Shown here piece by piece: positions 13,169 through 61,250 of a DNA stretch of 64,000 nt. The position numbers and the translations under genes are program-made. The DNA lies in the IMG/VR virus record IMGVR_UViG_3300046542_000248, positions 182,902 to 246,901 of that record, one strand, 5' to 3'. The notes beneath the pieces are model-generated. The model was not told where the DNA came from. It made no database searches and was given only the letters and a program-made list of their open reading frames with translations. Position 1 is the first letter of the stretch. Every line of letters starts with the position of its first letter.

Positions 13169-14401
13169 TTAAAGTTTTTCTAGAGTGTCCAGAGTGTTAT
13201 TCACACTTCTTAGGAATACTCCGTTCAAGCTAATGAAGTAAGCAATGAAATCATTGATTTCTTTTGTAATAACCGAAAGTGCTCTATAGGATTTTCTATC
13301 CATCATACCAGCTTCAACAACAGCTTTTTCAGAATCTTTCAACCCGTTCAAAGCATCATTGGATAAACCATCCAATAGTTGTCTATTCTTCTCAACAACG
13401 TCTGTCAGATGTTTTAAACCATTAAGAATTTCTTGAGTGGTGAGTTCTTGTGAACCATTTAAGCGTTTCCATTTATCACCATCTTCTTCTTTTTCAAATG
13501 TAGCTAAAGAACCAACTACACCTGATAGCTTTTTACCAATATCATCTTTCCGATTTTCCCCAGAAATAAATTGTTCAAGAGCGAATTTTACATTCTCATT
13601 GAAGTCCTCATCACTTTTATCAAGTTTATTAAGTCCTTCAATTCCGTCGAATGCATCTTGTTTACGAACTACGTTGTGTAGAACTTTATCTTGAATAGTT
13701 TTCACTTTATTGATATATACTTCCATCGTTTCCATCTTTGCAAATGTTAACGGTATTCTAATAGTTCTAGCTTGTTGCTTTGTAAACTTAGCATCGTCTT
13801 CTTCTCTTTTCTTACGTTTTGCTTCAGCCGCAGCCTCTTTCTTTTCTTTCTCAAGTTGAGCCAGCTTTTCTTGTTCTTCTTTTAACTGCTTTAGCTTTGC
13901 TTCGTATTCTGCATTTTCTTTATCTTTTAATTCTTTCATTTGATCTTTTAATTTATCCAGATTGGCTGCAACAGCATCAGTCATTGCAGTAAGTTTTTTC
14001 TCGGTTTGTGCATGAATTTCATCAGCTTTAACACCTTTAAATTCCGACTTCTTCATTCCTTCAGGTTGAGCCAACTTCTTTTCCACATCTTGTATTCTAA
14101 CTTTAGTATCTTTTACATTTTTGGAAAACTTGGATCGGATAAAGTTAACGAAGAGTCTAATTTTATCTCCAATCCATTTAAAGAATTTCTTAATGCCTTC
14201 GATAAACTTATTATCATCCGATTCTGTCAAATAAGTGCCAGACCAAGCTTCGAATAAGATATTATCGGTTGTAGTTGATTCATACATCAATGACTCTAGA
14301 GTCACAGGCTCAGGCATAACAAGTTCTGGGACATTTCCAGAACTAATTTCACCCATATTATATCCTTCCATAATGTAACGCAGTTTTGTTGAAATTTCCA
14401 T
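13169..14401 (-). CDS. internal head protein, KLxLIxEG family
   Basis: MEISTKLRYIMEG; repeated ES/EA sites; amphipathic FFKWIGDKIRLFVNFIRSKF. Confidence 0.7.
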   Translation of the reverse strand: MEISTKLRYIMEGYNMGEISSGNVPELVMPEPVTLESLMYESTTTDNILFEAWSGTYLTESDDNKFIEGIKKFFKWIGDKIRLFVNFIRSKFSKNVKDTKVRIQDVEKKLAQPEGMKKSEFKGVKADEIHAQTEKKLTAMTDAVAANLDKLKDQMKELKDKENAEYEAKLKQLKEEQEKLAQLEKEKKEAAAEAKRKKREEDDAKFTKQQARTIRIPLTFAKMETMEVYINKVKTIQDKVLHNVVRKQDAFDGIEGLNKLDKSDEDFNENVKFALEQFISGENRKDDIGKKLSGVVGSLATFEKEEDGDKWKRLNGSQELTTQEILNGLKHLTDVVEKNRQLLDGLSNDALNGLKDSEKAVVEAGMMDRKSYRALSVITKEINDFIAYFISLNGVFLRSVNNTLDTLEKL

Positions 14402-14429
14402 TTACTTTAACCTCCTATATAAAATATTC

Positions 14430-14441
14430 TATTTATATGTC
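14430..14441 (-). promoter_or_regulatory. putative late promoter GACA-N6-TA
   Basis: minus strand GACA tataaa TA. Confidence 0.55.
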
Positions 14442-14465
14442 ATCCAGTCTCTTATAAGCGTTAAA

Positions 14466-14475
14466 TATATATTAT
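14466..14475 (+). promoter_or_regulatory. putative early promoter TATATATTAT
   Basis: exact motif. Confidence 0.65.
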
Positions 14476-14515
14476 TAATATGACTATAACTATATCATAT
14501 TGGAGGAGGTAGGAA

Positions 14516-14758
14516 ATGTTTAAAACTCATGTAATTAAACTTAAATGCACAGGTAAAGACTGTAAAGACCATCAGAAGATTGAACTACAACCTGAACATT
14601 ATAACTCGGTAGCAACTGATATTAATCACTGGAAATCTATCGCTTTATGTGATGATTGCTTACAAAAGAAAATGGCTAAACGTGCCAAAGAATTTAGGAA
14701 TTTTATGGGTGATCCCAATGCAACTTTGGCTGAAATTTTAAATGGCCGCAGAAGATAA
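14516..14758 (+). CDS. small zinc-binding protein
   Basis: CTGKDC and CDDC; SD ggaggagg. Confidence 0.7.
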   Translation: MFKTHVIKLKCTGKDCKDHQKIELQPEHYNSVATDINHWKSIALCDDCLQKKMAKRAKEFRNFMGDPNATLAEILNGRRR

Positions 14759-14780
14759 AATACATTTTCAGAGTTATCAA

Positions 14781-14792
14781 AACCCTTAGATA
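14781..14792 (+). promoter_or_regulatory. putative nvRNAP promoter, AACC-N6-TA class
   Basis: AACC cttaga TA before the DNA polymerase. Confidence 0.55.
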
Positions 14793-14824
14793 ATAAATCT
14801 ACTCTATAGGAAAGGGCGCTGAGA

Positions 14825-20989: not shown

Positions 20990-22750
20990 ATGGATCGTCA
21001 ATACTTCCGTCAAAACATTTCTAACCCGCAAACATTTCACGGGACAGTTTCCCATGTATTCGATGTACTTGAAAACACAGTTGGTGCTACATATGGACCA
21101 GGTGGTACTCACAATATCTTCATGATGGGACCTGGAGAACTTAGTTCATCCAAAGATGGGCTTGAGAATTTGACTATGATGAAAATGGACAGCACAATTG
21201 CTCGTACAGTTCATCAAATGGCTATCGAAGTTGCTCAGCGTCAAGCATCCATCGTTGGTGATGGTACAACTTCCGCTGTTCTTATAATGGCTCAAGTGTA
21301 CAAACAGCTTCGTACTTCCAAAGCATTGTGGAATAAATATACATCTTCGACGATTCATAATGCAATGAATCAAATCCAAGATGGTATTATCTCTATGCTT
21401 AAAAACGCTGCATCAAAAATCAATACCGATGAAGAAGCATTCCACCTTGCGTACACTTCAACAGATCGCAATCGTGATCTAGCGGATGTTATCGCAAAGG
21501 TTTACAAAATCACTGAAAACTTTGCTGATACGAATATTATCCTTGACTATAGTGCAACGGAACAAACGTATCATTCCAATAGCAAAGGTCTATCAATCAT
21601 GGGTCGTATGATGAACCAAGCGTTCAATAACTACGATATCGAAACTTGTAAATTGAAAGAAGTTGAAGTTGTCGTAGTTGATGGTGCTGCTACTATCACT
21701 AATGACATCCTTGAATATGCAAATCAATTGAAACTTAGCGGTAAATCCTTGTTGATTATCTGCTCTGGTATTAAGAACGAAAACTTCTATCGTTATATTG
21801 AAGCAGTTGCTCAAAAGCAACCTGCATTCTTGCATAACATGGCAGTAGTATACAGCGATGCTAATACATTGCAAAAGAAAGATACTTACTATGATTTGAT
21901 TAAATCATCTGGCTGCGCAATCCTTGAAGAAGGCGTTGAGCTGAACAGTGAAACAATTCGTGAAATCTCCAAAGGGTATGCTCAAAACGTATTGATCAAA
22001 GACAAGAAAATGACTCTTGCTGGGTTTAACCAAACTCCAGAGTTAGAAACTTGGATTGAATCAATTGCTGCTCAAATTGCAGAGATTCACACAATGAACG
22101 ATAATCCGGAAGTATCCAAAGAAGATGTTCTTCAATCTCAAATGAAGATCAATTCGTTGAAAGCTCGCCATGCTAAACTTAAAGATGGTACTACTACTAT
22201 CTATGTAGGTGGCGAAACTAGTCAACGTAAATCTATTAACTATCGTCTTGTCGAAGATGGTGTTAAAGCGTTACAAGCTGCTTTGAACACTGGTTACTTC
22301 GTAGGGTGTAATACTACTACGATGAATGTTATCTATCAACTTCTGATCAAACAGAAGCAATCTAAGGGTAATCTAGATGATGTTTACGGACAACTTCTAA
22401 CGATTATTCTTACCGCTTACATTAATGTATACAAGAAGTTGGTTACAAACCGTGTAGCAACAGCTACCGAAGAAGCATTCTATCAAATGATTATCAATGA
22501 AAAATGTGCTGATATTATCAAGCCAATGGTTGATGATGTATCAGGTATTGAAGTTGATGTCAAGTATGCTGGAACTCCTGTATTCTGCGTAGTAAATCTA
22601 GCTGATGGTGATGAACTGGCTTCTGTAGTAATCAATCCTGCATCCACTGATACACTTATTGTGGAAAAAGCAATTGATGCTGCCTTGATTCTCGCTACTG
22701 CTAATACAATCATGACCGATGAGCATAATGAATTTGAATCTGTCCTTTAA
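20990..22750 (+). CDS. groEL: phage GroEL-like chaperonin (AR9 gp228/EL gp146-like)
   Basis: TYGPGG, SKDG, GDGTTSA, IYVGGET, EDGVKA, AIDAALILAT. Confidence 0.93.
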   Translation: MDRQYFRQNISNPQTFHGTVSHVFDVLENTVGATYGPGGTHNIFMMGPGELSSSKDGLENLTMMKMDSTIARTVHQMAIEVAQRQASIVGDGTTSAVLIMAQVYKQLRTSKALWNKYTSSTIHNAMNQIQDGIISMLKNAASKINTDEEAFHLAYTSTDRNRDLADVIAKVYKITENFADTNIILDYSATEQTYHSNSKGLSIMGRMMNQAFNNYDIETCKLKEVEVVVVDGAATITNDILEYANQLKLSGKSLLIICSGIKNENFYRYIEAVAQKQPAFLHNMAVVYSDANTLQKKDTYYDLIKSSGCAILEEGVELNSETIREISKGYAQNVLIKDKKMTLAGFNQTPELETWIESIAAQIAEIHTMNDNPEVSKEDVLQSQMKINSLKARHAKLKDGTTTIYVGGETSQRKSINYRLVEDGVKALQAALNTGYFVGCNTTTMNVIYQLLIKQKQSKGNLDDVYGQLLTIILTAYINVYKKLVTNRVATATEEAFYQMIINEKCADIIKPMVDDVSGIEVDVKYAGTPVFCVVNLADGDELASVVINPASTDTLIVEKAIDAALILATANTIMTDEHNEFESVL

Positions 22751-31235: not shown

Positions 31236-32273
31236 TTAGACATTTGAATCGCTCCTTTTTAATAAAAGTTCTTTATTGATTTTATCTTGATCATGATTAA
31301 GCATTCGACATTGATCATCATACCATTGCTGATCTTTACCGAGTTCAAAGAAATTATACTCAATATAAACAAAGTTATTAACAGATTCTTTATTAAGTAT
31401 TTCTCTAAGAGTATCTAAATCCATCATATAATAACTATCTTCCCATTGTAAAGCACCATTAATTACATGATCTACATGAAGAGATGAATTATCATCTGTA
31501 ATGAATGAAGAAATCATAATAGAACGAATCTTATTAGAATTATACCTGGCTGACATTGCATTAGCCCTATAGAAAGCTGGGATAGAAGCAGAGAATAGAG
31601 GCTCAAAGAATTTGACACTATCAGCAAGATGATAGTATTGCACATTCATAAACAATTCTCTACCGTACCAATCTGCCTTCTGAATACTTGTAGGAATTGG
31701 TATTGTCATAACACCCGTATTTAAACGAGTATTCTTAATTTGTCTAGCTCTTTCAACCATTTTATGCGTTGTATTGAAATAGTCTGGAAGATTGTGAAGA
31801 ATTTCACCAATACGATTAAATACAGCAGCATTGTTTTCTGTATCAGGGTTAATAACTCCTACATTGCTACCATTTTCTCCGAATAGGAATAGATATGCTA
31901 GTAGTTGTCCATAAGTCAATTCCCTATGATGCTGTCTTGGAAGTCGTACAACGTGATTAAGATTATTAAACGCAGTGTACAGAATTGCAAAAGTTCCTTT
32001 ATTGATAGGAAAATGTTCTGTTGGAGTTGCACCGCCGCCCATAGTTTCAATACGAGCAACTTCTCTGAAATAATACCAGGGATTGGTTGTACATTCCAAG
32101 ATAATCTTTTGCTTCTGTACAGATGTGAGGTTTGGATCATATGGATCTACATCTTGTAAATCATTATTATGCAGATGTAACATATGCGGAACTGTTAAAC
32201 CGTGTTCCTTAAATAATTTGTACAGAGCAAGGAATGAAATGTTCTTAGTATTGTGATGATACCAATAACTCAT
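31236..32273 (-). CDS. degenerate terminase-large-subunit ATPase paralog (no nuclease domain)
   Basis: TKNISFL...VDPYDP...EC..NPWYYFREVARI, typical of jumbo-phage TerL N termini; PRQHHRELT in place of PRQxGKT; 345 aa only. Confidence 0.7.
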   Translation of the reverse strand: MSYWYHHNTKNISFLALYKLFKEHGLTVPHMLHLHNNDLQDVDPYDPNLTSVQKQKIILECTTNPWYYFREVARIETMGGGATPTEHFPINKGTFAILYTAFNNLNHVVRLPRQHHRELTYGQLLAYLFLFGENGSNVGVINPDTENNAAVFNRIGEILHNLPDYFNTTHKMVERARQIKNTRLNTGVMTIPIPTSIQKADWYGRELFMNVQYYHLADSVKFFEPLFSASIPAFYRANAMSARYNSNKIRSIMISSFITDDNSSLHVDHVINGALQWEDSYYMMDLDTLREILNKESVNNFVYIEYNFFELGKDQQWYDDQCRMLNHDQDKINKELLLKRSDSNV

Positions 32274-33855: not shown

Positions 33856-35145
33856 TTATTTTTTTGTGGGTAATACTATTTTACCTGCCATATCCATAGT
33901 GATCTGGCTAAGACCATCTAGGAACTTCCATGCTATGGAATTATGAACTACTGTAAAGTCTGTTGCTAATTTAAACATGTAGTTGTAAAGCTTGATAAGA
34001 CTATCCAACTTAGATTTATAATCAGCAAGTACTCGTTGCTCAGCATTTACAATATTCCACTTATTAGCTTTCTTAGCATTATCAATTCTATCCAAACTTA
34101 ATTGAAGTTCTTTAGTGATCATTTGCTCATAAAGTTTAAGTTTAGCTGGAATAACCTTATCAGCATAATCAATAATTTTTTCTTGCTGCCTTTCCATATG
34201 CTTTGCTTTCTCATATAGATAATCCATATCATCTTTGGGCCATACGATCACTTTCTTATTCGGACCATAGAGATTTTCATAGATAGATTCTTCACTATAC
34301 GGAGTTTTGAATACTTCCGCAAAGATAGAATCAAGGAATCGCTTCTCATTATCAATGATAGAATCGGTGAACATTACTACCTTAGAATCAGTTTGAGTTA
34401 AACCAATGATTCTTTGGATACGATCATCAAAGATATCAAATACCTTTTCGATCCCTTTAGCAAAGAAATCATAATCAGGTTTATCATACACATGAGAATG
34501 AACTGTCATCTCATAATTGATACTCTTCATATCAACTAACTTTGCAAGCTCTGGGTACTTCTCTTTCCATTCCGATTTAGCTTCATCAGCTTTACTTTTC
34601 TTACGAGAAAACTTACTCTTTAAGAAAGCAATAAACTGAAGTACTTTCTCTTTAATCCATTTAAAGAACCTACTGATATAAGATAAGAATCCACCATTAG
34701 AACTCTCAGTCAAAATATCCATAACAGATTCTGTAACATAATCGTTATTAATTAAAAGAAAATCAGGCAATGAGGATTCATGCAACTTATGTAATTCTTC
34801 CTCAAGTTCTGCAATTCTTTCCTTATTAGCCTCAGCACCAGATCTTTTCAGTAAGAAAATCTTATGACTAATTTCTTTCTTTTGCTGTGAAGTTGATGGT
34901 GGAGTTGAAGATACAATCTCATCATAACGCTTTTGAAGTTCCTCAATCTGTTTAGCAATCTCATCACTATGACCATGAAGTTGCTGCTGTCTAAGTTTGC
35001 CGATTCTAGTTTTAATTTGCTGCTTTTCATGTGTTACACGATTCTCATCTTTCCATTGAGGTAATGGGAAGTTAAATGATGATTCGTTTATTTCCTGAAA
35101 AGAATATCCTTCTTGAATAAGAAGTAGTTTAGAAGTTACATCCAT
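33856..35145 (-). CDS. internal head protein, KLxLIQEG family
   Basis: MDVTSKLLLIQEG; LTES; FFKWIKEKVLQF; start moved to follow SD ggaggg. Confidence 0.75.
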   Translation of the reverse strand: MDVTSKLLLIQEGYSFQEINESSFNFPLPQWKDENRVTHEKQQIKTRIGKLRQQQLHGHSDEIAKQIEELQKRYDEIVSSTPPSTSQQKKEISHKIFLLKRSGAEANKERIAELEEELHKLHESSLPDFLLINNDYVTESVMDILTESSNGGFLSYISRFFKWIKEKVLQFIAFLKSKFSRKKSKADEAKSEWKEKYPELAKLVDMKSINYEMTVHSHVYDKPDYDFFAKGIEKVFDIFDDRIQRIIGLTQTDSKVVMFTDSIIDNEKRFLDSIFAEVFKTPYSEESIYENLYGPNKKVIVWPKDDMDYLYEKAKHMERQQEKIIDYADKVIPAKLKLYEQMITKELQLSLDRIDNAKKANKWNIVNAEQRVLADYKSKLDSLIKLYNYMFKLATDFTVVHNSIAWKFLDGLSQITMDMAGKIVLPTKK

Positions 35146-35235: not shown

Positions 35236-36298
35236 TTAAAGATTTTTACCTTTTTCAACGATTTTCGTATACTCAGCGTTAGCAATCTGTTCAGTCTTCG
35301 AAAGAAGACTCTCAGTGATGCTACCATGAGTTACAATGAAATCGTTAGTAATTTTGATCAGGTAGTTGAAAGATTTAACTACGAAACTTAATTTACGTTT
35401 CATTGTCATGATCTCTTTACCTGCTTGAGTTGCAGCGTCATGATCTTGAGAACTATTTGCTTTGTTCAATTTCTCTGTAGCTAGAGCAATTTGAGTATCA
35501 AATGCTCTCTTGTAATGACCAAGTTCTTCTTTGAGGGTTTTCTCTGAGAAATTAATGATACGATTACTTTGATCTTGCATATGACGCAATTTTGCTACCA
35601 ATTTAGTCATATCGAAAACGGTAACGGTTTCTTTCTTAGCGTCACCGTATACCAGTTTAATCAAATTCTCTTTACTATAATCAATACCAAGAGCAGACTT
35701 GAAAAGAGAATCAAGGAATTTCTGCTCATTATTAATTGCAGTGTCGTTGATTCCTTTTGCGCTGTCATTAGGAGTAGACACAATTGAAGATACGCTGTCT
35801 TTAACTGTGCTGTAAACTTTTCCTAAACCAATTTGCCAAGAAATCTACATTGTCTTTATCGTATACATTAGTATACGTTTCAACTTCATAGTCAGTAACC
35901 GATTTGCCAACAGTTGCTTTGAATTTCGGACTTTCAATTATTGCTACTTGCTCTTTAACTTTCTCTTCAACTTTATCGGTTCTAGTTTTAGTAGTACCGC
36001 CAGTGAATTTACTTTTAACGAACTTAACGAATTGTGCAATTTTATCAGCAATCCATTGGAATAGCTTAGCTACTGTAGCAAGGAATCCTTTGCTTTGAGC
36101 AGCACCATCACTCTCAGTGAGAGAACCGATTGTTAAATCAGCCATAAAGTTAATATCAGTTGAAACGCTCTCAATGAATAGTGAGAATTCATCACCAGCA
36201 GCTTCTGTTACTAGCTCTGTGAAACTTTTAGCACCAGAATTGATTTCTCCGATAGAGAAACCTTCCTGAATAAGTTGTAGTTTTTTTGCAATTTCCAT
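35236..36298 (-). pseudogene. KLxLIQEG family head protein interrupted by a +1 frameshift near 35830
   Basis: removing one base joins MEIAKKLQLIQEG...DFLAN to GLGKVYSTVKDS...INNEQKFLDS, collinear with neighbours. Confidence 0.75.
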
Positions 36299-36344
36299 GA
36301 CGTTTCCGCCTCCCATTATAATATTGTACACTAATTAGAAGTTG

Positions 36345-37367
36345 TTAAACGTTAACTGTAACTACAATATCACTGCGCAGTTTATCGGTCACAGTTTTAT
36401 GAGCCATCATAAATTCATTTGCAAGTTTAAATGTGTATTTGTATAGCTTAGAAATTTGCTGCACTTTAACTCTATTTACTTCCATCAAGTAATTTTGTTT
36501 GGCAATGGTTTGAGCATCCATATTCTTTGCCAGTATTTCAGTCTCATGATCCTGTATTTCAGGATTATTGATTCTATTAATCTTTTCCTCAGCTCTTGCA
36601 ATATGTATATTCAGAGCTGCTTCATAGTTTGAAAAATCTTTAGATATAGTTGATTTAACGAAATTAACAATCGCCCACTCTTGTGATTCCAAATGACTCA
36701 ATCTTGTATACAGAGTAAGTAGATTAGCACTGGAAGCATTAACCTTTTTGATAGGTCCATATATAATATCAAATATAGCGTTATTGCTATAATTAACATC
36801 AAAGCAGTCATTAAAGATAGTATTCATGAATTTTTGTTCATTATCAATATCAGGATTAACTGTAGTTGGATCTCCTGATGAATCGTGAAGTACTTCTAGA
36901 GCACGTTTATTCAGTACTTCAAAAACTATATTCACACCATTTCCAAAGTAGTCTTCTTTTTCATAATCAAATACATTACTGTATACATCAATTTGCTTTA
37001 CACCTTGAGCTTCAAACTTTATTCTAAACTCAGGCATCTGTATTCTATCAATAGATTCTTTGATAGACTTATTAATCTTAGTAGTATCAATTCTATTAGA
37101 TGAAAACTTATGTGTAATAAATTTAATAAATTGTGATATCTTTTCTCTAATCCAAGCAAGGAATTTTTTAATCTGTACCAAGATTCCAGTACCTGAACTT
37201 TCATAGATCATCATTACTGACATACTGTCAATATCGGAGATAACACCTTCAGTGAATAGTGATAGGCTATCGCTATTAATTGATTCAAATATTGATACTT
37301 TGCCAGCATTAATATCTTCAATAGAATTACCTTCTTGAATTAAACGTAGTTTTCTTGAAATATCCAT
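36345..37367 (-). CDS. internal head protein, KLxLIQEG family
   Basis: MDISRKLRLIQEG; YES; FLAWIREKISQF. Confidence 0.75.
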   Translation of the reverse strand: MDISRKLRLIQEGNSIEDINAGKVSIFESINSDSLSLFTEGVISDIDSMSVMMIYESSGTGILVQIKKFLAWIREKISQFIKFITHKFSSNRIDTTKINKSIKESIDRIQMPEFRIKFEAQGVKQIDVYSNVFDYEKEDYFGNGVNIVFEVLNKRALEVLHDSSGDPTTVNPDIDNEQKFMNTIFNDCFDVNYSNNAIFDIIYGPIKKVNASSANLLTLYTRLSHLESQEWAIVNFVKSTISKDFSNYEAALNIHIARAEEKINRINNPEIQDHETEILAKNMDAQTIAKQNYLMEVNRVKVQQISKLYKYTFKLANEFMMAHKTVTDKLRSDIVVTVNV

Positions 37368-37450: not shown

Positions 37451-38329
37451 TTACATATACTTCTCAATCATCGTTAATTTATTAATATGTGCATTCACGT
37501 ATGAAAGAATCTCTGGATATGTGTGTAACATTGTTTCACACAGAAGTTGAATGATCTTGAAACTGTCATCAGCCATTGCACTAAGATTCTCTATTTGAGT
37601 TTCGTAGTAACCTAATGCCTGATGCATATCTTTCCATAGATCATAGAATGAATCAGTGAATATGATAATATTTTGAATTTGCTCTTTGGACTGTATCCGA
37701 ACAGCGGCTGATTTATTAAGCGATAAATCAAGTGCATTCGGTGTGACATTTTTATCATAGGAAATTGGCGCTCCATTGAGTACCTTTCTCCAGATAATAC
37801 TTTGCATTCCGTTAACATCAGTACTGGATGTAATTTCGGAATTATAACCAGCACCAGTATACGCATAATCAACGTAATCAGCATTGACATCTTCGAATTT
37901 ACCAACCAAATTTTTTAGAACTGTCATTGCAGCATTTGGATCATTGACAATCATATCAAAATTGTCTGGAACCATAAATGGATGAAATTCTTTACTCATT
38001 ATCTTTTTCAAACTGGATGTAGTTTGTATGTGAGTTTCATGTTTCTTCTTTTGAAACATGTGCATTATGAAAGTTTTAAATTGACGAATCTTTTCGAGTA
38101 TCCAATTAATGAACTTTCTAAGAACGCTGGTTTTATCGCCATCACTCTCTTTGAGTATATTCATACTCATTTGAGAAACGTAGCTAAAATCAACAGCGAC
38201 ACTTTCTATGAATAATTGAAGTTCATCAGCGGATTCATTGATACTGGAGAATGATTTAGCTTCTCCTGAATTGATTTCTCCGATTGAGAAACCTTCTTGA
38301 ATAAGACGAAGTTTCGATGTTACGCTCAT
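37451..38329 (-). CDS. internal head protein, KLxLIQEG family
   Basis: MSVTSKLRLIQEG; LKES; FINWILEKIRQF. Confidence 0.75.
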   Translation of the reverse strand: MSVTSKLRLIQEGFSIGEINSGEAKSFSSINESADELQLFIESVAVDFSYVSQMSMNILKESDGDKTSVLRKFINWILEKIRQFKTFIMHMFQKKKHETHIQTTSSLKKIMSKEFHPFMVPDNFDMIVNDPNAAMTVLKNLVGKFEDVNADYVDYAYTGAGYNSEITSSTDVNGMQSIIWRKVLNGAPISYDKNVTPNALDLSLNKSAAVRIQSKEQIQNIIIFTDSFYDLWKDMHQALGYYETQIENLSAMADDSFKIIQLLCETMLHTYPEILSYVNAHINKLTMIEKYM

Positions 38330-38354
38330 GGTATATAAACCTCCCGAATTATAT

Positions 38355-39227
38355 TTAAGTCATATTTCTATCTAGTGTAACTAAACGTCCTAAATGTGAA
38401 TCAACGTATTTAAGAATTTCTGGAAGTGTATACAAGATAGTCTCACATACAAGCCTTATTGATCTAAAGCTTTCGTCCGAGAGACTTCTTAGTTTTTTCA
38501 ATTGACCTTCGTAATAAGATAAAGATTCATTGATATCTTTCCATAGATCATAAAAATTACCAGCAAACTCAACGATATTTTGAACTTGATATGATGAGTT
38601 AATTTCGACCGATGGCACTCGTTTAAGTGTAATATCTATCGCAGATTTAGTGATGTTATTATCACTTGTAATATTGCGACCAATTATCACTTGACCCCAA
38701 GTAACTTTTCTAAGATCAGAAATACTTTGATACCGAGTCATCTCAGCAGTATCTCCATTATATACAGCATCAAATCTTCTAACCAATGAATCTTCAAATC
38801 TTTCCATTACATCTTTGAGATTTTTAATGGCATCTTTAGGAGAATATACCACATCTTCAAAAGTATCATAAAAAACAAAAGGTGTAAAATTCTTACCTAA
38901 TAGAGATTGTAATTTTGCTAGATGAGTATAAGTTAATTCTTGTTTTTTCTTTCTAAACAAATTCATTAGTAGCATTTTAAATTGACCTATTTTCTGAACG
39001 ATCATATCCAGAATTCTTCTGAAGATAAGATCTTTATTAGGTCGGTTAACAGGTACATCACTCTCTTGTAAGAGAGAATTACTCATCTCAGAAATATACT
39101 CCAAATCAATAAAAAGACTGGAGAAAAGTAAAGAGAAGTCATCTTTTGGAAGTGTAATATGTCCTGTATTTATATCACTTATGGTATATCCTTCTTGGAT
39201 GAGTCGAAGCTTGGATTGTATGTCCAT
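38355..39227 (-). CDS. internal head protein, KLxLIQEG family
   Basis: MDIQSKLRLIQEG; LQES; close paralog of 37451..38329. Confidence 0.75.
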   Translation of the reverse strand: MDIQSKLRLIQEGYTISDINTGHITLPKDDFSLLFSSLFIDLEYISEMSNSLLQESDVPVNRPNKDLIFRRILDMIVQKIGQFKMLLMNLFRKKKQELTYTHLAKLQSLLGKNFTPFVFYDTFEDVVYSPKDAIKNLKDVMERFEDSLVRRFDAVYNGDTAEMTRYQSISDLRKVTWGQVIIGRNITSDNNITKSAIDITLKRVPSVEINSSYQVQNIVEFAGNFYDLWKDINESLSYYEGQLKKLRSLSDESFRSIRLVCETILYTLPEILKYVDSHLGRLVTLDRNMT

Positions 39228-39373: not shown

Positions 39374-40657
39374 ATGAAAGTATTAAATGTTCAAAATTTA
39401 ATTGAAACTCAGGCTAATCTACGGCAGGAGAGAAATCTAAGTCAGTTCGTAAGATTCCTTGATACAAACCCTGTGCCATCGACTTATTACTCTATTAATA
39501 ACCCAGAATCTACCACTGAAATTGGTACTGGGGATGTTATGTCCTATGTGGCTGAAGATTCGCCAGTTCGATATAACAAAATTCTTAATCTACCTTTATT
39601 TTCAGTAAATGCAATCACTGCTACTATTACCTACGATGAAACAACTGGTACTTATACTGAATATGCTGATCAGGCTCAGGTATTGAATCAAACGATTCAG
39701 CCTAACCCTGGTGATGCATTCATTATCGGCTCATTTAATCCTGAAATTATCTTCATGATCACAGCAGTAGGTATCCGTGCTATTAAAGGTAAAGATCATT
39801 ATATCATTGAGTATTCGGTTGTACCTACTTCTCGAATCAAAAGAATCGAGAATCAAGTTACTGATACTTATGAAACAATTTACAGAAATATCGGTACTGA
39901 AGATAAAGCTATCATTAGAAGAGAAGATTATAATCTTCTTGAACAATGTGTAGATTCTTATGGTAAACTTCTTGACCGATACCTTGAGGAGAATTATGAT
40001 GACGATATTGGCTATTTACGAACTCCTGACAATCTATCAGATGATATTTTGGGAATGGGTACTTGTAAATATCTTATAAAGTTCCTTACCGATAATAGAG
40101 TAATCTATTTCGATGAGATTCTTGAAATGATCTTTGCATTTGAAACTCCATTAGCATTTGAACCTAAACACAATCGTAATTATAATAGAACTTTCTTCCT
40201 TCAAAAGTTTATTACTAAAACTATGGAGAAAGATATGATGAGTTATGTATCATTCAGATCTCTTCCTGTAAGTTTATTCAAAGAGATCGAAGATGTCACT
40301 CTATACCAATCTATTGAATTTGATTATTTACCAATTCAATGGGTAGAACCTACTCCAGACCCTGAACTAGAAACGCCTCCTGAAGAGGGAGAATTAGAAC
40401 TTGTATTACCTGAAGCTCCTTATGGTTCTATGCTATTATTAGATTATCTTTATACTAATAGTATCATTGATAAAAACTATGAAGGATTAAGTGGTTTGAA
40501 ACTTGTAGTTGCTAAAGCATACAATGATGAGAAAATTACTGTAGATGAATTTAATACAGCAATTAATGATTATGATGCTACAGACTTCGAACGTTTCTAT
40601 CTTATCCCATATGTATTATTTATTCTTAAAGTAAAGATCAAAGCCCTACAAAAATAA
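39374..40657 (+). CDS. virion structural protein (jumbo-phage neck/connector-like)
   Basis: TYYSIN..ESTT..G...Y...DSP.RYNKI and QPNPGDAF pattern; late promoter. Confidence 0.6.
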   Translation: MKVLNVQNLIETQANLRQERNLSQFVRFLDTNPVPSTYYSINNPESTTEIGTGDVMSYVAEDSPVRYNKILNLPLFSVNAITATITYDETTGTYTEYADQAQVLNQTIQPNPGDAFIIGSFNPEIIFMITAVGIRAIKGKDHYIIEYSVVPTSRIKRIENQVTDTYETIYRNIGTEDKAIIRREDYNLLEQCVDSYGKLLDRYLEENYDDDIGYLRTPDNLSDDILGMGTCKYLIKFLTDNRVIYFDEILEMIFAFETPLAFEPKHNRNYNRTFFLQKFITKTMEKDMMSYVSFRSLPVSLFKEIEDVTLYQSIEFDYLPIQWVEPTPDPELETPPEEGELELVLPEAPYGSMLLLDYLYTNSIIDKNYEGLSGLKLVVAKAYNDEKITVDEFNTAINDYDATDFERFYLIPYVLFILKVKIKALQK

Positions 40658-56310: not shown

Positions 56311-56544
56311 ATGAGTATTGAAACTAAACTTAAATGCATTCTAGAGGGAACATTCATAGAAGAAACTGTATTAACTAGCAGTGAAACCGACGAACTTTAT
56401 GATTTAAAGGATAAAGTTAAGACAGCTAGAGATAGAATGCTGTTCATAAAAGATCCTTCTGAGAAACGTAGTCGTCAAGCAGAACTTGAGCATATGGAGG
56501 ATAGACTACATTCTCTTAGGTCCAAAGCCTTTGCAAGAGGATGA
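56311..56544 (+). CDS. small tagged internal head protein
   Basis: MSIETKLKCILEG then a helical hairpin. Confidence 0.65.
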   Translation: MSIETKLKCILEGTFIEETVLTSSETDELYDLKDKVKTARDRMLFIKDPSEKRSRQAELEHMEDRLHSLRSKAFARG

Positions 56545-56555: not shown

Positions 56556-57680
56556 ATGGATATTAAAGAAAAGTTAAAGTATATACAAGAAGGACACTCC
56601 TTCAGCGAAATCGTTTCGGATAATTTCACTCCACTTAATCAAGTATTGAAAGAATCTCATGAGCTATTCATGGAATCTTTTATGGCTGATGCTAAATACA
56701 TTATCGAGATGGGCGAAGATCTCAAATCTAAAGCTACATTCTTTGATCATGTTAAAAATGTATTGAAATGGTTACGTGATAAAGTAGTTCAGTTCATTAA
56801 CTTTATACGTCAAAAGCTATTCTCTTCAGGTAAAGGTACTAAACAAACTGTTAAGAATGTGAAAGATACTGCTGCTAAGATGGAGATCATTGGTCGTAAA
56901 CCATCAAAACGTATTAATCCTGAAGATGAGCCAGATACATATAGTGATAATTCTGAAGATCATGGGATTCTTCATAAAGATGGAACTCTTCACTATAATC
57001 CAGAAAATCATGAGATTACTATATTCTCTAAAGTTCTGGATACTGATAACTTCTTCGATTCTGGATACAAGAGGATATATAATACTCTTCATGAGTATAT
57101 TTCCAAACTGGAGCAGAATCCAAGTAATCATGATCAAATAATTTCTGTAGATGATGTGATTAATACAAAACCTTTTCTCAATAAGGTATTCAAAGAATCA
57201 CTCTCAGTTAATTATGATAAACTAGAAATCTTTAAAAAGATTTATGGTGATCTTATCACTAAACCTATTACAGTTCGTGAGCTAACACTCTTAGCTGATA
57301 AGCTGTATAGTATGGATGAAGAATCTACTGTATTTGCTAATTGGATACAGAAATCTTTACCCAGAGCATTGGATGATGTTGAAAGACACTTTACTAGAAA
57401 TATGCAACTGATTAAAGATAAACTTGAAGTCGGCTCATCTAAAAATGTTCAAGCTGATACTGAGATGGTTAATAATCTTAATGATGCATTAGCTAAAGTT
57501 ATTAAGCTTATGAATATGCAAATGTCGGTTATTCAAATATTTGCCCAAATGCACGTTGAAGTATTTGTGCATCTTAAGGGTGAGATTGAACATTATGACT
57601 GGGTATTGAATCCATCTAATCAAGATTACGATCAGGATGACTTTAATAGCTATGATAATCATGACGGGTTAATTCATTAG
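56556..57680 (+). CDS. internal head protein, KLxxIQEG family
   Basis: MDIKEKLKYIQEG; LKES; VLKWLRDKVVQFINF. Confidence 0.72.
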   Translation: MDIKEKLKYIQEGHSFSEIVSDNFTPLNQVLKESHELFMESFMADAKYIIEMGEDLKSKATFFDHVKNVLKWLRDKVVQFINFIRQKLFSSGKGTKQTVKNVKDTAAKMEIIGRKPSKRINPEDEPDTYSDNSEDHGILHKDGTLHYNPENHEITIFSKVLDTDNFFDSGYKRIYNTLHEYISKLEQNPSNHDQIISVDDVINTKPFLNKVFKESLSVNYDKLEIFKKIYGDLITKPITVRELTLLADKLYSMDEESTVFANWIQKSLPRALDDVERHFTRNMQLIKDKLEVGSSKNVQADTEMVNNLNDALAKVIKLMNMQMSVIQIFAQMHVEVFVHLKGEIEHYDWVLNPSNQDYDQDDFNSYDNHDGLIH

Positions 57681-57684
57681 TACA

Positions 57685-57723: not shown

Positions 57724-57735
57724 AACATCGTTATA
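57724..57735 (+). promoter_or_regulatory. putative late promoter AACA-N6-TA
   Basis: AACA tcgtta TA. Confidence 0.65.
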
Positions 57736-57746
57736 ATACTTATTAT

Positions 57747-58820
57747 ATGGAGGGATACAATTTGTTCAATATCGAGCGTAAAGCTAACCGACTTAATGAA
57801 TCTATTTCTATCAACCTTGGTAAAAATACATTCAAAGATACTCTCCTTGAAGCTGGTCTTGATCACTTGAAACTTGATTCAGTGATTACTACAGCTCTGC
57901 AAGAATCTAATCAAGTATATGATGGACATGTGCAAAATAGTTTAAGAGAATACTCTATAGAATCTCTTAACAAAGCTATGGGAATTCTTGAAACTACTAT
58001 TGATATTATTTCAGCATTCAAGAATATCGTTGCTGGAGAAATGGCTCAATTTAAAGCTATCAATAAACGGGTTATTGAAACTTATGAACCTTTATTGAAA
58101 CGACTTGATCGTCACAAGTATGGATATCAAATTCCTGAATACAATCTTGAAAATTTGGAAGCTATTGATATTCTTACTCGTGTACTGAATCTACTCTCTA
58201 AGAAATTCAATTTCAATTTATATGGACCTGGTGCTATAAATTGCGATGAAGTAGAAAGTGCCATTACTAGATTTAAAAGAAATTACAATGAGTATCATGA
58301 GGATCTGAAACGTGCAATTCTTGGAGTTCCTAACTCTGCAAGTATTGATGACTTCCCAGGAATTGTAAGATCCTTCCTAGTAAGTGATAACAATCTTCAG
58401 ATGAAACGTATCGGAGATGACATATTTAATGATCTTCGGTCTGCTGAGATTGGAATTGATTCACTTGATAATGTGATAGGATTGCTGCAAAAAGAAATCT
58501 TTGGCATCCTTGAGCATAAAGCAGTCGTTGAAAATGGTACTGGTAATGATTATGTCAATAGTGTATATACAAATGCTATTATAATTCGTACCAATTTAAT
58601 TGCATCAAGTTTAACCTATATTGAAGATATTATTAAGATCAAAATACACATTGCTGAAGAAATGTGTATCAATCATCGGAAAGTAATCATCGACGGATAT
58701 GAAAAAATATCGAAGGACCCAGAAAGTAACGAGGGTATTTATCTGCCTAACAACGATCCAGAGATCGTTAAAACGCATTCAGAATACCTTAGTGGGCATT
58801 GGATTGGCGCTTCGAAATGA
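57747..58820 (+). CDS. internal head protein (related family)
   Basis: LNES, LLEA, LQES sites; helical. Confidence 0.6.
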   Translation: MEGYNLFNIERKANRLNESISINLGKNTFKDTLLEAGLDHLKLDSVITTALQESNQVYDGHVQNSLREYSIESLNKAMGILETTIDIISAFKNIVAGEMAQFKAINKRVIETYEPLLKRLDRHKYGYQIPEYNLENLEAIDILTRVLNLLSKKFNFNLYGPGAINCDEVESAITRFKRNYNEYHEDLKRAILGVPNSASIDDFPGIVRSFLVSDNNLQMKRIGDDIFNDLRSAEIGIDSLDNVIGLLQKEIFGILEHKAVVENGTGNDYVNSVYTNAIIIRTNLIASSLTYIEDIIKIKIHIAEEMCINHRKVIIDGYEKISKDPESNEGIYLPNNDPEIVKTHSEYLSGHWIGASK

Positions 58821-58870
58821 ATTATGAGTTTAGTAACATCTGATTGTAACAAATAACTTCTTTTTTTTGT

Positions 58871-58882
58871 AACATAGGTATA
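58871..58882 (+). promoter_or_regulatory. putative late promoter AACA-N6-TA
   Basis: AACA taggta TA. Confidence 0.7.
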
Positions 58883-58920
58883 AGGAAAATTAATTTTTAA
58901 CCCCCTAAGGAGGAAACCAC

Positions 58921-60090
58921 ATGTTTAAAGATCTTTTTGAAAGTTCCACAGGTGCAAGCGCTGGTACTCTGCAACTTGAGTCTGCATTTGATTCCGCTGA
59001 ATTCTCTCTTTACCTGAACGAAACTGATTCCACAATTAATGGATTGGTTGATTCCTACCGCGGCGTAATGACAGAAGCTCTTACTGAGAGCGCTGGCATT
59101 ATGAACGAAAGCGTTAACCTTGTTCTTGAACAAGCTAACGAGCATGTTGGTAACAAAATCGTAGCAGCTTTGAAAAAGCTGTGGAACTGGATCGTTAAGA
59201 TCGTTGATAGCTCTATCAACTTCGTAATGACTCTAGTAACAAGCAACAAAAAATTCATCGAAAAGATCAAACCGGAAGTTGCTAAAAAGAACCTTTCCGC
59301 TGAAGATCTTGCAAAAATCACGATGACTTCGTATAACTACAAGCCACAAGCTATCAGCACTGAAAAAGTGACGACTGTATTGGGTGAAGTTGATGCTGAA
59401 GCTCGTGCTGATTACAGCGCAGCAAACAAAGAAAAGCTTGACAAAGTTGTAGAAACTTACAACGAAAACAAACGTAAATCTGCTGGTTGGGAAAAAATCT
59501 CCCTGGCAAACCGTTTGACAAACGTTAGCATGCATGAGGTACAAGACTGGGCACGTTATAAAGACGAGCTTCGTGTATCTCTTCAAGGCGGCGAGAAGAA
59601 AACTACGAAGACTTTCTCCATGGATTTCTTCAAAGTTATCGAAACTTATTCCCAAAATGCCGAAGCAATCAAAGGCATTATGTCCAAATCCAAAGAAGAT
59701 TTCAAGAAAACCATCGACCACATCATCCAAAAAGCTGGATATGCTAAGGCCGAAGGTAAAGGCGAAGGTGCTGATGCTAAAGCTGCATCCGGTCGCGTAG
59801 CTTTCTTGAACTACTTGCGTGCAAGAACTGCTGCTACAGCAGATGCGTTTGCAGAATTGATGAGCATGAAGCTCTCCATTCTTAAACGTGAAGTAGGCGA
59901 AGCTCGTTCATTCTGTATGCATGCGGCTCGCTACAATCCGAAAAAAGCAGAAGGCGCTGCATCCGTGAAAAACGAATCCGCCGCTGTTATTCCTTTCGAT
60001 CCATTATTCGAAGATGCTGAAGAAGTAACTGAAGCTGGTTCGCTTACTGAAGGTGCACAAGGCGGCGCTGCTGCTTCTGTAACTTTCTAA
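58921..60090 (+). CDS. abundant internal head protein (MFKDLFES N terminus)
   Basis: strong SD taaggagg, own promoter and terminator, high-expression-type codons, ES sites at both ends, LWNWIVKIV helix. Confidence 0.65.
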   Translation: MFKDLFESSTGASAGTLQLESAFDSAEFSLYLNETDSTINGLVDSYRGVMTEALTESAGIMNESVNLVLEQANEHVGNKIVAALKKLWNWIVKIVDSSINFVMTLVTSNKKFIEKIKPEVAKKNLSAEDLAKITMTSYNYKPQAISTEKVTTVLGEVDAEARADYSAANKEKLDKVVETYNENKRKSAGWEKISLANRLTNVSMHEVQDWARYKDELRVSLQGGEKKTTKTFSMDFFKVIETYSQNAEAIKGIMSKSKEDFKKTIDHIIQKAGYAKAEGKGEGADAKAASGRVAFLNYLRARTAATADAFAELMSMKLSILKREVGEARSFCMHAARYNPKKAEGAASVKNESAAVIPFDPLFEDAEEVTEAGSLTEGAQGGAAASVTF

Positions 60091-60105
60091 TAGCGTAACG
60101 ATAAG

Positions 60106-60137
60106 AGAGCATACTCCTTGTGAGTATGCTCTTTTTT
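60106..60137 (+). terminator. intrinsic terminator
   Basis: agagcatactc/gagtatgctct-ttttt. Confidence 0.85.
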
Positions 60138-60205
60138 ATTGGATTAAAAAGTATAAGTAGCCAGTATAGGCTACTTATTTTTTCGTCTTTATCTTCTTAT
60201 TTACC

Positions 60206-60217
60206 GACCCTTAAATA
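60206..60217 (+). promoter_or_regulatory. putative nvRNAP promoter GACC-N6-TA
   Basis: GACC cttaaa TA. Confidence 0.45.
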
Positions 60218-60250
60218 AGTAATTGTTACTATTTTAAGGGAGGCTACATA

Positions 60251-60583
60251 ATGAACACACAGCAAAAGCTAAAGTTAATAATGGAAGGTGCTATTCTCAA
60301 TGAAGGCGATGTTATTCAGTTTGGCGATCATCATTTGAGAGAAAGAAGATATCAAGAGGAATTAGATAGACTTCAAACCGAGTTCAATAGATTTATTGAT
60401 GACTTGGCACAAACTATTGCTTATCTCAGCAGAAAGAAAGAAGATGGTTCATTATCCAATGATGAATATCTTGCTAAGATGGGTGAACTTGAATCTCGAC
60501 GAGCATTGATGATTACTTATAATAGTAAGATTAATCATCTTAAGCATGAGATACAAACGATGCAGCAAAGTCGAGGGCATTAA
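60251..60583 (+). CDS. small tagged coiled-coil protein 1
   Basis: MNTQQKLKLIMEGAILNEGDVI. Confidence 0.75.
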   Translation: MNTQQKLKLIMEGAILNEGDVIQFGDHHLRERRYQEELDRLQTEFNRFIDDLAQTIAYLSRKKEDGSLSNDEYLAKMGELESRRALMITYNSKINHLKHEIQTMQQSRGH

Positions 60584-60585
60584 GT

Positions 60586-60909
60586 ATGGATATTAAAAAT
60601 GCCCTTAATCTAATCATGGAAGGTGTCATTCTAAATGAATCTGATGTGATAGATTTTACCGCAAGACAGAGAGTAAAGACATACGAAAATCAAATCAGAG
60701 AATATACAGCACAAGTTACAAAGATGACTGCTGAAGTTCATCGTCAATGGACTATTCTTGAAAGTAAAAAGAAATCTGGTCTTCTAACTGGTGAACAGTT
60801 TATAGAGCAGATGATGGCACTTCAACCTACAACTAGTAGGATTCGTGAAATAGAAACTCAAATTAATATTCTTCAAGATAAAATAGATGGATTATCAAGC
60901 CATGCTTAA
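60586..60909 (+). CDS. small tagged coiled-coil protein 2
   Basis: MDIKNALNLIMEGVILNESDVI. Confidence 0.75.
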   Translation: MDIKNALNLIMEGVILNESDVIDFTARQRVKTYENQIREYTAQVTKMTAEVHRQWTILESKKKSGLLTGEQFIEQMMALQPTTSRIREIETQINILQDKIDGLSSHA

Positions 60910-60923
60910 GGAGGAATAGTACT

Positions 60924-61250
60924 GTGGATACTGTAAAAAAGTGTTTAAAGTTAATTATGGAAGGTACTATTCTTAATGAAAGCGATGTCGTAGATTTTAC
61001 ATCCAGACATAATGCACAAAGATATGAAGAAGATATTCATAACTTCCAACTTCAGCTAAATAAAGTTACTATTGAAGTACGTGAAGCTGAGGATAAGTAC
61101 GATCGACAAAAGAATTCTGGAGAGATTACTACTCATGAATTCGTAGCTAAGAAATTGGCTCTTGAGCCTAAGAAAAAATTAATTCAGTATTATACTCGCC
61201 GAATAGGTGATGCGAAGGTAAATCTTCAATCACTACAGGCACATGCATAA
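60924..61250 (+). CDS. small tagged coiled-coil protein 3
   Basis: KCLKLIMEGTILNESDVV. Confidence 0.75.
   Translation: MDTVKKCLKLIMEGTILNESDVVDFTSRHNAQRYEEDIHNFQLQLNKVTIEVREAEDKYDRQKNSGEITTHEFVAKKLALEPKKKLIQYYTRRIGDAKVNLQSLQAHA

What the first reader, a model, noticed from the sequence alone, without database searches (positions are those of the whole stretch)
13169..61250. Modular N-terminal tag M-x(3-5)-KLxLI(Q/M)EG on about 11 late proteins of different size
The same 13-20-aa start occurs on 13169, 33856, 35236-36298, 36345, 37451, 38355, 56311, 56556, 60251, 60586 and 60924, proteins of 77 to about 430 aa. It is followed by ES/EG/EA sites like the x-x-E cleavage sites of T4 gp21 and phiKZ gp175 prohead proteases. 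By analogy to the T4 internal-protein capsid-targeting sequence, this may be a portable packaging signal for cargo ejected into the host. If so it is usable for protein delivery.
Basis: partly seen in the sequence, partly recalled or inferred. Interest (0 to 1): 0.75.

Follow-up and report, generated by a model that had tools for sequence, protein, structure and literature searches.

The report
Capsid-targeting-like N-terminal tag, jumbo phage
An uncultured 247-kb jumbo phage puts the same 13-18-residue N-terminal helix, ending in a protease-type Ile-x-Glu|Gly site, on about 19 otherwise unrelated proteins; it most likely loads them into the assembling capsid and is then cut off, as the phage T4 capsid targeting sequence is.

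Summary
All 11 window genes start M-x4(5)-K-L-x-L-I-x-E-G. The 246.9-kb genome has 17 clear and 2 degenerate carriers (16 core-pattern matches against 0.19 expected), all at the extreme N-terminus with Glu at residue 12 or 13.

Conservation is at protein level: synonymous codons vary, and in orthologs from a 207-kb relative the tag core is 71% identical against 40% for the body.

Carriers fall into at least 8 sequence-unrelated groups:
- one large paralog family whose fold and profile match AR9 and phiKZ-type virion proteins;
- small coiled-coil proteins;
- an acidic protein in the scaffold position between protease and major capsid protein;
- a zincin protease with an intact HEIGH motif;
- a protein with a membrane-like segment.

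The phage is a distant AR9/PBS1 relative with a T4 gp21-family prohead protease (Pfam S77, above cut-off). The tag's invariant I-x-E|G has the P3/P1 geometry of gp21 sites and of T4's MKTYQEFIAE|A. Similar sites are conserved in the capsid-protein propeptide.

Best reading: a T4-CTS-like targeting propeptide, cut inside the tag itself. Packaging and cleavage are inferred, not shown. It is a new variant of a known kind.

The parts
13169..14401 (-). T04, 410 aa, family A paralog; tag residues 1-18 = 14348-14401 (MEISTKLRYIMEGYNMGE)
33856..35145 (-). T05, 429 aa, family A paralog; an 80-aa insertion separates the tag module from the family domain; tag = 35092-35145
35801..36298 (-). T06a, tagged N-terminal piece (165 aa) of a frameshifted family A paralog; tag = 36245-36298
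35236..35781 (-). T06b, C-terminal piece of the same paralog in another frame; matches the C-terminal halves of T05 and T07
36345..37367 (-). T07, 340 aa, family A paralog; tag = 37314-37367
37451..38329 (-). T08, 292 aa, family A paralog; AF2 model has the tag as helix 3-11 and a disordered linker 26-34; tag = 38276-38329
38355..39227 (-). T09, 290 aa, family A paralog, divergent neighbour of the AR9 gp164 homolog (positional equivalent of AR9 gp165 virion protein); tag = 39174-39227
56311..56544 (+). T10, 77 aa small helical protein (no detectable body similarity to T03; grouped by size and N-terminal likeness only); tag = 56311-56364
56556..57680 (+). T11, 374 aa, family A paralog (position of AR9 gp215 virion protein); tag = 56556-56609
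57762..58820 (+). Untagged-looking neighbour with a degenerate tag: probable TTG start after a GGAGGG site gives MFNIERKANRLNES (Glu13)
58921..60090 (+). Distant family A-like protein (profile E = 4e-4) with only a short N-terminal L-F-E|S (residues 5-8)
60251..60583 (+). T12, 110 aa, family B small helical protein; tag = 60251-60304 (MNTQQKLKLIMEGAILNE)
60586..60909 (+). T13, 107 aa, family B; tag = 60586-60639
60924..61250 (+). T14, 108 aa, family B, GTG start, one extra residue before the Lys; tag = 60924-60980
39374..40657 (+). Untagged virion structural protein (AR9 gp164 homolog, phrog_3013) flanking the T05-T09 cluster; context only

Best explanation
The tag is a capsid (prohead-core) targeting propeptide of the T4 CTS type.

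Inferred mechanism: residues 3-11 form a short amphipathic helix (I3, L7, L9, I10 flanked by K6 and R/K8). This helix docks the newly made protein onto the assembling prohead core, whose likely scaffold (T02) carries the same tag. Once the shell closes, the gp21-family prohead protease cuts after the invariant Glu12/13 (P3 Ile, P2 any residue, P1 Glu, P1' Gly). It often cuts again after a second hydrophobic-x-Glu site 6-7 residues on. The 12-19-residue peptide is released and the mature cargo stays inside the head.

Cargo comprises family A internal head proteins, small helical proteins, a zincin protease and a protein with a membrane-like segment. At least part of it is probably ejected with the DNA.

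Shown:
- the motif, its strict N-terminal position and its statistics;
- protein-level conservation;
- occurrence on unrelated bodies, and absence from the AR9 homolog of one of them;
- the presence of the protease;
- virion-protein relatives of the cargo.

Inferred: docking, cleavage at E12, packaging and ejection.
For: 1. Position and statistics. There are 16 core matches against 0.19 expected, all at ORF starts. Glu is always residue 12 or 13.

2. Protein-level selection. The invariant Leu position (-5) uses 5 different Leu codons; all 3 Ile and all 4 Gly codons occur. In G000-G001 orthologs the tag core is 71% identical, against 36% for the adjacent 29 aa and 40% for the rest.

3. Site-like conservation pattern. 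L(-5) 26/26, I(-2) 24/26, E 26/26, G(+1) 24/26, with P2 free. The same holds in about 42 metagenomic family A representatives.

4. Protease. Genome 154104-154970(-) matches Pfam PF03420 Peptidase_S77 at 35.6 bits against a cut-off of 27, and also phrog_207. These proteases cut after Glu (PMC5694885).

5. Independent sites. Hydrophobic-x-E|S/A/G sites are conserved in the capsid-protein propeptide of G000, G001, AR9 and LPJP1.

6. Modularity. All 6 metagenomic homologs of the zincin T01 carry the tag plus a linker of variable length, whereas AR9 gp051 starts directly at the body. T05 has an 80-aa insert after the tag.

7. Cargo looks like head proteins. The family A profile hits AR9 gp095, a virion structural protein, at E = 1e-4. 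The T08 model's best fold matches are an AR9 virion protein and phiKZ-type virion or head proteins. T02 lies between the protease and the capsid protein. No tail, replication or transcription protein carries the tag.

8. Precedent. The T4 CTS is 10-19 aa with processing residues 8 and 10, and ipII/ipIII start MKTYQEFIAE|A. SPN3US gp53/54 share a 15-aa N-terminus with AXE-12, and phiKZ gp93 is cut at SLE-13.
Against: There is no proteomic or genetic evidence, because the phage is uncultured.

No cultured relative has the strict tag. AR9 shows only a weak enrichment of N-terminal hydrophobic-L-x-E (10.6% against 5.1%, p = 1e-4) and LPJP1 shows none.

AR9 gp051, the T01 homolog, is not annotated as a virion protein.

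The helical amphipathicity of the tag is only moderate, in the top 18% of control 11-mers.

Nine of the 19 carriers are paralogs of one family, so part of the sharing is plain descent.

The docking partner is unknown. The tag has no sequence similarity to the T4 CTS beyond I-x-E.
Confidence: 0.66

Rival explanations
1. Core self-assembly motif rather than an address label. The tag helices of the scaffold-like T02, family A and the small helical proteins bundle with one another to build the internal core or inner body. Cleavage, if any, serves to dismantle the core. Cargo enzymes such as T01 would be passengers by the same contact.
For: The candidate scaffold T02 carries the tag itself. Most carriers are helical or coiled-coil proteins. 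The hydrophobic positions 3, 7 and 10 fit a heptad stripe.
Against: It cannot be told apart from the best explanation by sequence, and in T4 the CTS also works by affinity for the core. An 11-residue helix is short for a stable bundle. The invariant E-G and the free P2 position are better explained by a protease site.
Confidence: 0.17
2. Inherited N-terminus of one very divergent superfamily. All carriers descend from one ancestor and the N-terminal helix is simply their slowest-evolving part, with no portable targeting role.
For: Nine carriers are demonstrable paralogs, three more form family B, and tandem duplication is evident.
Against: T01 is a zincin protease whose AR9 homolog lacks the tag, and the linker between tag and body varies by 0-12 residues among its homologs. 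Bodies range from 77-aa helical proteins to an acidic low-complexity protein and a protein with a membrane-like segment, with no detectable similarity between groups.
Confidence: 0.07
3. Chaperonin-recruitment or other folding or sorting signal. The N-terminus directs proteins to the phage-encoded GroEL-like chaperonin, as the N-terminus of T4 gp23 does for host GroEL, or to the membrane.
For: The phage encodes a GroEL homolog at window 20990-22750. PMC10052503 cites a chaperonin-targeting role for a T4 propeptide.
Against: The capsid protein, the classic chaperonin client, lacks the tag. Helical proteins of 77-110 aa hardly need a chaperonin. The tag is not hydrophobic enough for a signal peptide, and this idea does not explain the invariant E-G.
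Confidence: 0.04
4. Nucleic-acid-level element: a conserved translation-initiation region or operator for a translational regulator that overlaps the first codons.
For: All carriers have strong GGAGG sites, and 7 of 17 have TATAAT just upstream.
Against: Codons inside the tag vary freely at synonymous positions while the amino acids stay fixed. The upstream DNA is not alignable.
Confidence: 0.02

Closest known systems
Phage T4 capsid targeting sequence (CTS) of IPI/IPII/IPIII and Alt (Mullaney and Black 1996; reviewed in PMC9026906)
   Same: Both are extreme N-terminal and 10-20 residues long, and both are shared by proteins with unrelated mature parts. Both end in hydrophobic-x-Glu followed by a small residue: T4 has MKTYQEFIAE|A and this phage has M-x4-KLxLIxE|G. 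Both phages have a gp21-family (Peptidase_S77) prohead protease. In both, residues upstream of the site are conserved, which in T4 are the targeting determinants.
   Different: There is no sequence similarity beyond I-x-E. The phage is an AR9/phiKZ-type jumbo phage, not a T4-like one. About 19 carriers in at least 8 groups are spread over the whole genome, against a handful in T4. The candidate scaffold itself carries the tag. A second site 6-7 residues later is usual. The T4 ipII and ipIII tags are identical even in DNA, whereas these differ at synonymous sites. Function is untested here.
Conserved N-termini of SPN3US gp53/gp54 and phiKZ gp93 (PMC5694885)
   Same: These are giant-phage inner-head paralogs that share a short N-terminus with a Glu at residue 12 or 13 and a second Glu site three residues later (MANFVKSKLARESVE). 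phiKZ gp93 is cut at SLE-13. The authors call this CTS-like.
   Different: There it is reported only for paralogs of one family and forms part of propeptides of about 125 aa. The P3 residue is A or S rather than Ile. Profile comparison finds no homology of family A to SPN3US gp53 or gp50; the similarity is only in fold and role, to phiKZ-type virion proteins.
Encapsulin cargo-loading peptides (own knowledge, not tested here)
   Same: A short terminal peptide shared by unrelated cargo proteins that directs them into an HK97-fold shell.
   Different: They are usually C-terminal, bind the shell interior directly and are not removed by a protease.

Membership tests
T4-type capsid targeting sequence (functional class) | Located at the extreme N-terminus, 10-20 residues long | tested here: met
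   All carriers have the Glu at residue 12 or 13, and the module spans about 13-19 residues.
T4-type capsid targeting sequence (functional class) | Shared by proteins whose mature parts are unrelated | tested here: met
   At least 8 groups have no detectable similarity once the tag is removed. The T01 family has the tag while AR9 gp051 lacks it. Nine carriers are nevertheless paralogs of one family.
T4-type capsid targeting sequence (functional class) | Ends in the cleavage motif of the prohead protease (hydrophobic-x-Glu followed by a small residue) | tested here: met
   I/L/M-x-E-G is invariant with P2 free. The same site type is conserved in the capsid-protein propeptide. The actual specificity of this protease has not been measured.
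T4-type capsid targeting sequence (functional class) | The genome encodes a gp21-family (Peptidase_S77) prohead protease | tested here: met
   PF03420 scores 35.6 bits against a cut-off of 27, and phrog_207 gives 1.4e-12.
T4-type capsid targeting sequence (functional class) | The tag is necessary and sufficient for incorporation into proheads | not testable with these tools
   This needs genetics or fusion proteins in a cultured member of the clade.
T4-type capsid targeting sequence (functional class) | The tag is removed in mature virions | not testable with these tools
   This needs virion mass spectrometry. No proteome exists for this clade, and the AR9-type proteome papers read report no N-terminal processing data.
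T4 CTS (sequence homology) | Sequence similarity to MKTYQEFIAE | tested here: not met
   Only the I-x-E is shared. The tag is analogous or diverged beyond recognition.
SPN3US gp53/gp54 - phiKZ gp93 paralog family | Detectable homology of the protein body | tested here: not met
   hhalign probability is about 1% or less against SPN3US gp53 and gp50. There are only moderate fold matches (TM 0.3-0.5) to phiKZ-type virion proteins. phiKZ gp93 itself was not compared.
AR9/PBS1-type jumbo phages (genome kinship) | Shared core genes and gene order with AR9 | tested here: met
   52 proteins have tblastn hits to AR9 at about 21-48% identity, and the protease-capsid protein and gp164/gp165 neighbourhoods are syntenic.

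The most novel reading that the evidence does not exclude
A whole uncultured clade of AR9-related jumbo phages uses one recognisable, portable address peptide to load about 8% of its genes' products into the capsid. These include an active zinc protease, a membrane-inserting protein and the scaffold itself. The complete packaged and ejected proteome of such phages could then be read directly from sequence, and new cargo would be recruited in evolution simply by acquiring the 13-residue tag. The tag would be a second, independent and sequence-distinct CTS system, usable for protein packaging in phages of Gram-positive-type hosts.
Probability: 0.4. Interest if true: 0.7.

Novelty: new variant of a known kind. 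Interest (0 to 1): 0.58.

Why it matters
How giant phages select the dozens of proteins packed inside their heads is an open question. The SPN3US and phiKZ studies could only point to long, dissimilar propeptides and one pair of paralogs with a shared N-terminus.

Here the signal is short, sharply defined and present on many unrelated proteins. That gives three things:
1. A sequence-only way to list the candidate internal and ejected proteins of an uncultured phage clade, including an enzyme likely delivered into the host.
2. A clear, testable peptide for packaging experiments.
3. An example of how a capsid-loading tag spreads among genes.

If the tag is portable, it could serve for loading foreign proteins into phage heads, as the T4 CTS has.

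Tried and rejected
- **Close or cultured relatives.** megablast of a 4.9-kb stretch and tblastn of T07 against deposited phages gave no match. The strict tag is therefore confined to uncultured relatives.
- **Protease screen.** A whole-genome screen with PF03420 missed the protease. A direct scan of the protein found it.
- **IMG/VR scans.** A back-translated tag scan gave 16 single hits, which is about chance level by my own rough estimate, apart from the one relative.
- **Family libraries.** PHROGs and Pfam scans of the tagged proteins returned essentially nothing. The phrog_10 'major head protein' hit of T04 (E = 0.007) looks like coiled-coil noise.
- **T01 model.** It came out at low confidence (pLDDT 50), so I ran no fold search on it.
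- **SPN3US comparison.** hhalign of family A against SPN3US gp53 and gp50 was negative.
- **DNA/RNA-level element.** Rejected on synonymous codon variation.
- **'MEG' start at 57747.** It looked like a tag remnant but is part of a ribosome-binding site for a TTG start.
- **AR9 N-terminal LL-x-E motif.** The enrichment is weak and includes false members such as the conserved N-terminal strand of the protease. I keep it as a lead only.
- **Output handling.** One hmmsearch printed far too much output. Only its top hits were used.
Full report
**What the window is.** The window is bases 182,902-246,901 of a single 246,901-bp viral contig from IMG/VR, rated complete by CheckV, with about 35% G+C. 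It has no close relative among deposited phages.

Conserved proteins show it to be a distant relative of the AR9/PBS1-type jumbo phages. These include split multisubunit RNA polymerase pieces, a GroEL-like chaperonin, DNA polymerase and 'virion structural' families. Other relatives are jumbo phages of Staphylococcus, Listeria and Fusobacterium, and Yersinia phiR1-37, all at 25-32% identity. Fifty-two proteins have tblastn matches in AR9, often in the same gene order.

**Check of the observation.** A loose pattern finds exactly these eleven in the six-frame translation of the window, each 4-7 residues after a start codon. Over the whole genome, a core pattern matches 16 times against 0.19 expected from shuffles, with a maximum of 2.

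A motif-blind comparison of the first 15 residues of all ORFs recovers the tag as the largest N-terminal cluster. It adds these carriers:
- genome 8303+ (T01), 155805+ (T02) and 159609+ (T03);
- genome 82504+ (T15), 117938- (T16) and 118999- (T17);
- degenerate forms at 75492- (T18d) and 172592+ (T19d).

T19d's ortholog in the relative has a regular tag. The window gene at 57762 (TTG start) has a degenerate form, MFNIERKANRLNES. The count is therefore 17 clear and 2-3 degenerate carriers.

The '35236-36298' gene is one paralog broken by a frameshift near 35,800. I describe it but did not join its pieces.

**Anatomy of the tag.** Anchored on the Glu, 26 tags from this genome and its relative show:
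- Leu at -5 in 26/26;
- Ile at -2 in 24/26;
- Glu in 26/26;
- Gly at +1 in 24/26;
- Lys or Arg at -6 in most;
- a free residue at -1.

The Glu is always residue 12 or 13. In 20 of 26 tags a second hydrophobic-x-Glu/Asp follows 6-7 residues later, for example AILNE18 or SIGE18. The full module is therefore about 18 residues with two tandem candidate sites.

Codons vary freely at synonymous positions. Five different Leu codons are used at the invariant Leu position (-5), and all Ile and Gly codons occur. Every carrier has a GGAGG-type ribosome-binding site. The conservation therefore acts on the peptide, not on DNA or RNA.

In the AlphaFold model of T08 (mean pLDDT 81), the tag is a helix over residues 3-11 that stops at E12-G13. 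A disordered linker (residues 26-34) separates the module from the helical body.

**Who carries it.** With the tag removed, the carriers fall into these groups:
- Family A: T04-T09, T11, T15 and T18d, which share a domain of about 100 aa after the tag.
- Family B: T12-T14, at 107-110 aa.
- T03 and T10: 89 and 77 aa, with coiled-coil character. They have no detectable body similarity to each other and are grouped by size and N-terminal likeness only.
- T01: a zincin with an intact HEIGH motif.
- T02: 245 aa, pI 4.1, with an acidic low-complexity region and a helical C-terminus.
- T16: 219 aa, with a hydrophobic membrane-like segment.
- T17: 77 aa, Cys-rich.
- T19d: 168 aa, basic.

No tail, replication or transcription protein carries the tag.

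**Evidence that the carriers are head proteins.**
- The genome has a prohead protease of the T4 gp21 family at 154104-154970(-). It matches Pfam Peptidase_S77 at 35.6 bits against a cut-off of 27, and also phrog_207.
- The order is protease, a 230-aa gene, T02, then the major capsid protein (phrog_20655). This mirrors AR9 gp113-gp116 and puts T02 in the scaffold position. AR9 gp115 is likewise acidic.
- The family A profile hits AR9 gp095, annotated as a virion structural protein, at E = 1e-4, over the part after the tag.
- The T08 model's best structural match is an AR9 virion protein of 268 aa, the length of gp095. It is followed by virion or head structural proteins of 201phi2-1, Psa21, Phabio, Noxifer and others, with TM scores of 0.3-0.5.
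- T09 and T11 occupy the positions of AR9 virion proteins gp165 and gp215.

**Modularity and spread.** T01 is homologous to AR9 gp051, annotated 'zincin protease', from T01 residue 21 onward. AR9 gp051 begins directly at the conserved body, MVRTLLLESYFGKNK. All six metagenomic homologs of T01 are 36-49% identical, and one lies on a 246,689-bp contig of 45% G+C. Each has the tag followed by a linker of 0-12 residues before L-x-E-A-Y-Y-G-K-N. T05 has an 80-residue insert between tag and family domain.

A 207-kb relative, IMGVR_UViG_3300025530_000275, has nine tags on orthologs that are 37-59% identical overall. The eight-residue core is 71% identical, against 36% for the next 29 residues and 40% for the rest.

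A profile of the family A N-domain finds 70 cluster representatives among 1.84 billion proteins. About 42 of them start with the tag, and more distant ones have a short form, KLLEG or KLLES.

AR9 and Listeria phage LPJP1 lack the strict tag. AR9 has only a weak excess of N-terminal hydrophobic-L-x-E.

**Mechanism.** The proteases of T4, phiKZ, 201phi2-1 and SPN3US all cut after Glu, and they differ at P3. In T4 the CTS is a 10-19-residue N-terminal propeptide. The first ten residues of IPIII suffice for packaging, residues 4 and 7 matter for targeting, and residues 8 and 10 matter for processing. I confirmed in the T4 genome that ipII and ipIII start MKTYQEFIAE followed by Ala.

The tag here has the same layout. 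Conserved upstream residues (K6, L7, L9) precede an Ile10-x-Glu12|Gly13 site, and the position between Ile and Glu is free, as expected for P2. Independently, the capsid-protein N-terminal region holds hydrophobic-x-Glu|Ser/Ala/Gly sites that are conserved among this phage, its relative, AR9 and LPJP1. One of them lies just before the conserved shell domain.

I therefore take the tag to be a core-targeting propeptide that the gp21-type protease removes after Glu12/13, probably with a second cut a few residues later. Docking, cleavage, packaging and ejection are inferences.

**Comparison with what is known.** Functionally this is the T4 CTS idea. In giant phages the nearest report is the identical 15-residue N-terminus of SPN3US gp53 and gp54, with AXE-12 and SXE-15 sites, and cleavage of phiKZ gp93 at SLE-13. 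The authors called this reminiscent of the CTS.

The present case differs in several ways:
- a distinct sequence;
- a hydrophobic P3, as in T4;
- use on about 19 proteins of at least 8 unrelated groups, including the scaffold candidate and an enzyme;
- conservation across an uncultured clade.

Family A shows no profile-level homology to SPN3US gp53 or gp50. I rate it a new variant of a known kind.

**Rivals.**
- A self-assembly motif of core proteins is a close variant that sequence cannot separate from the best explanation.
- Pure common descent is contradicted by T01 and by the diversity of bodies.
- A chaperonin or sorting signal does not explain the invariant E-G or the untagged capsid protein.
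- A nucleic-acid element is refuted by the codon data.

**Limits.** 'Late' expression is supported only by the structural-gene context and by a TATAAT hexamer upstream of 7 of 17 tagged genes, against 25 of 248 genes overall. The T01 model was too poor to use. The host is unknown. Strong GGAGG sites and Firmicute or Fusobacterium phage relatives suggest a low-G+C Gram-positive-type host, but this was not tested.

Noticed in passing
window 31236-32273 (-), and genome 161269-163431 (+), outside the window: The terminase large subunit appears to be encoded in two distant pieces on opposite strands. The 345-aa ATPase part is in the window. A 720-aa ORF about 51 kb away matches later exons of AR9 gp120, and AR9's own terminase is joined from 5 pieces.
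   Followed up: partly
window 35236-36298 (-): Family A paralog T06 is split by a frameshift near 35,800. It could be a pseudogene, an assembly error or programmed frameshifting. The pieces were left as they are.
   Followed up: partly
window 20990-22750 (+): A phage-encoded GroEL-like chaperonin (phrog_5725, 6.7e-55), as in some other jumbo phages.
   Followed up: no
genome 8303-9574 (+), locus L061:303-1574: The tagged zincin T01 keeps the HEIGH motif. Its database gene call (413 aa, against 423 aa for T01) appears to start inside the tag; the start itself was not read and is inferred from the length. Two metagenomic family A entries likewise start 'MEGY...', so automatic gene calls may clip this tag.
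   Followed up: partly
window 1-855 (+): Three tandem small paralogs start M-[YIF]-[KR]-V-W-L-K. This is an unrelated N-terminal cluster found by the same scan.
   Followed up: no
upstream of tagged genes, e.g. window 14402-14440, 36299-36330 and 38330-38354: A TATAAT hexamer lies just 5' of the ribosome-binding site in 7 of 17 tagged genes, against 25 of 248 genes overall. It may be a late-promoter element.
   Followed up: partly
L002 12-917 and L012 (G001 205734-206954): Both ends of the 207-kb relative carry the same repeat, which points to terminal redundancy or an assembly overlap of a circularly permuted genome.
   Followed up: no
genome 156638-158281 (+), locus L060:6638-8281: The first ~100 residues of the major capsid protein hold hydrophobic-x-E|S/A/G sites that are conserved with AR9 and LPJP1 (E55 and E97 here). 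This suggests a propeptide of about 97 residues.
   Followed up: partly
AR9 (NC_031039) gp051, gp117, gp152, gp165, gp214 and gp215: Several AR9 virion proteins and both of its zincins start with a short hydrophobic-L-x-E within residues 5-15. This may be a minimal counterpart of the tag; the enrichment is weak (p = 1e-4).
   Followed up: partly
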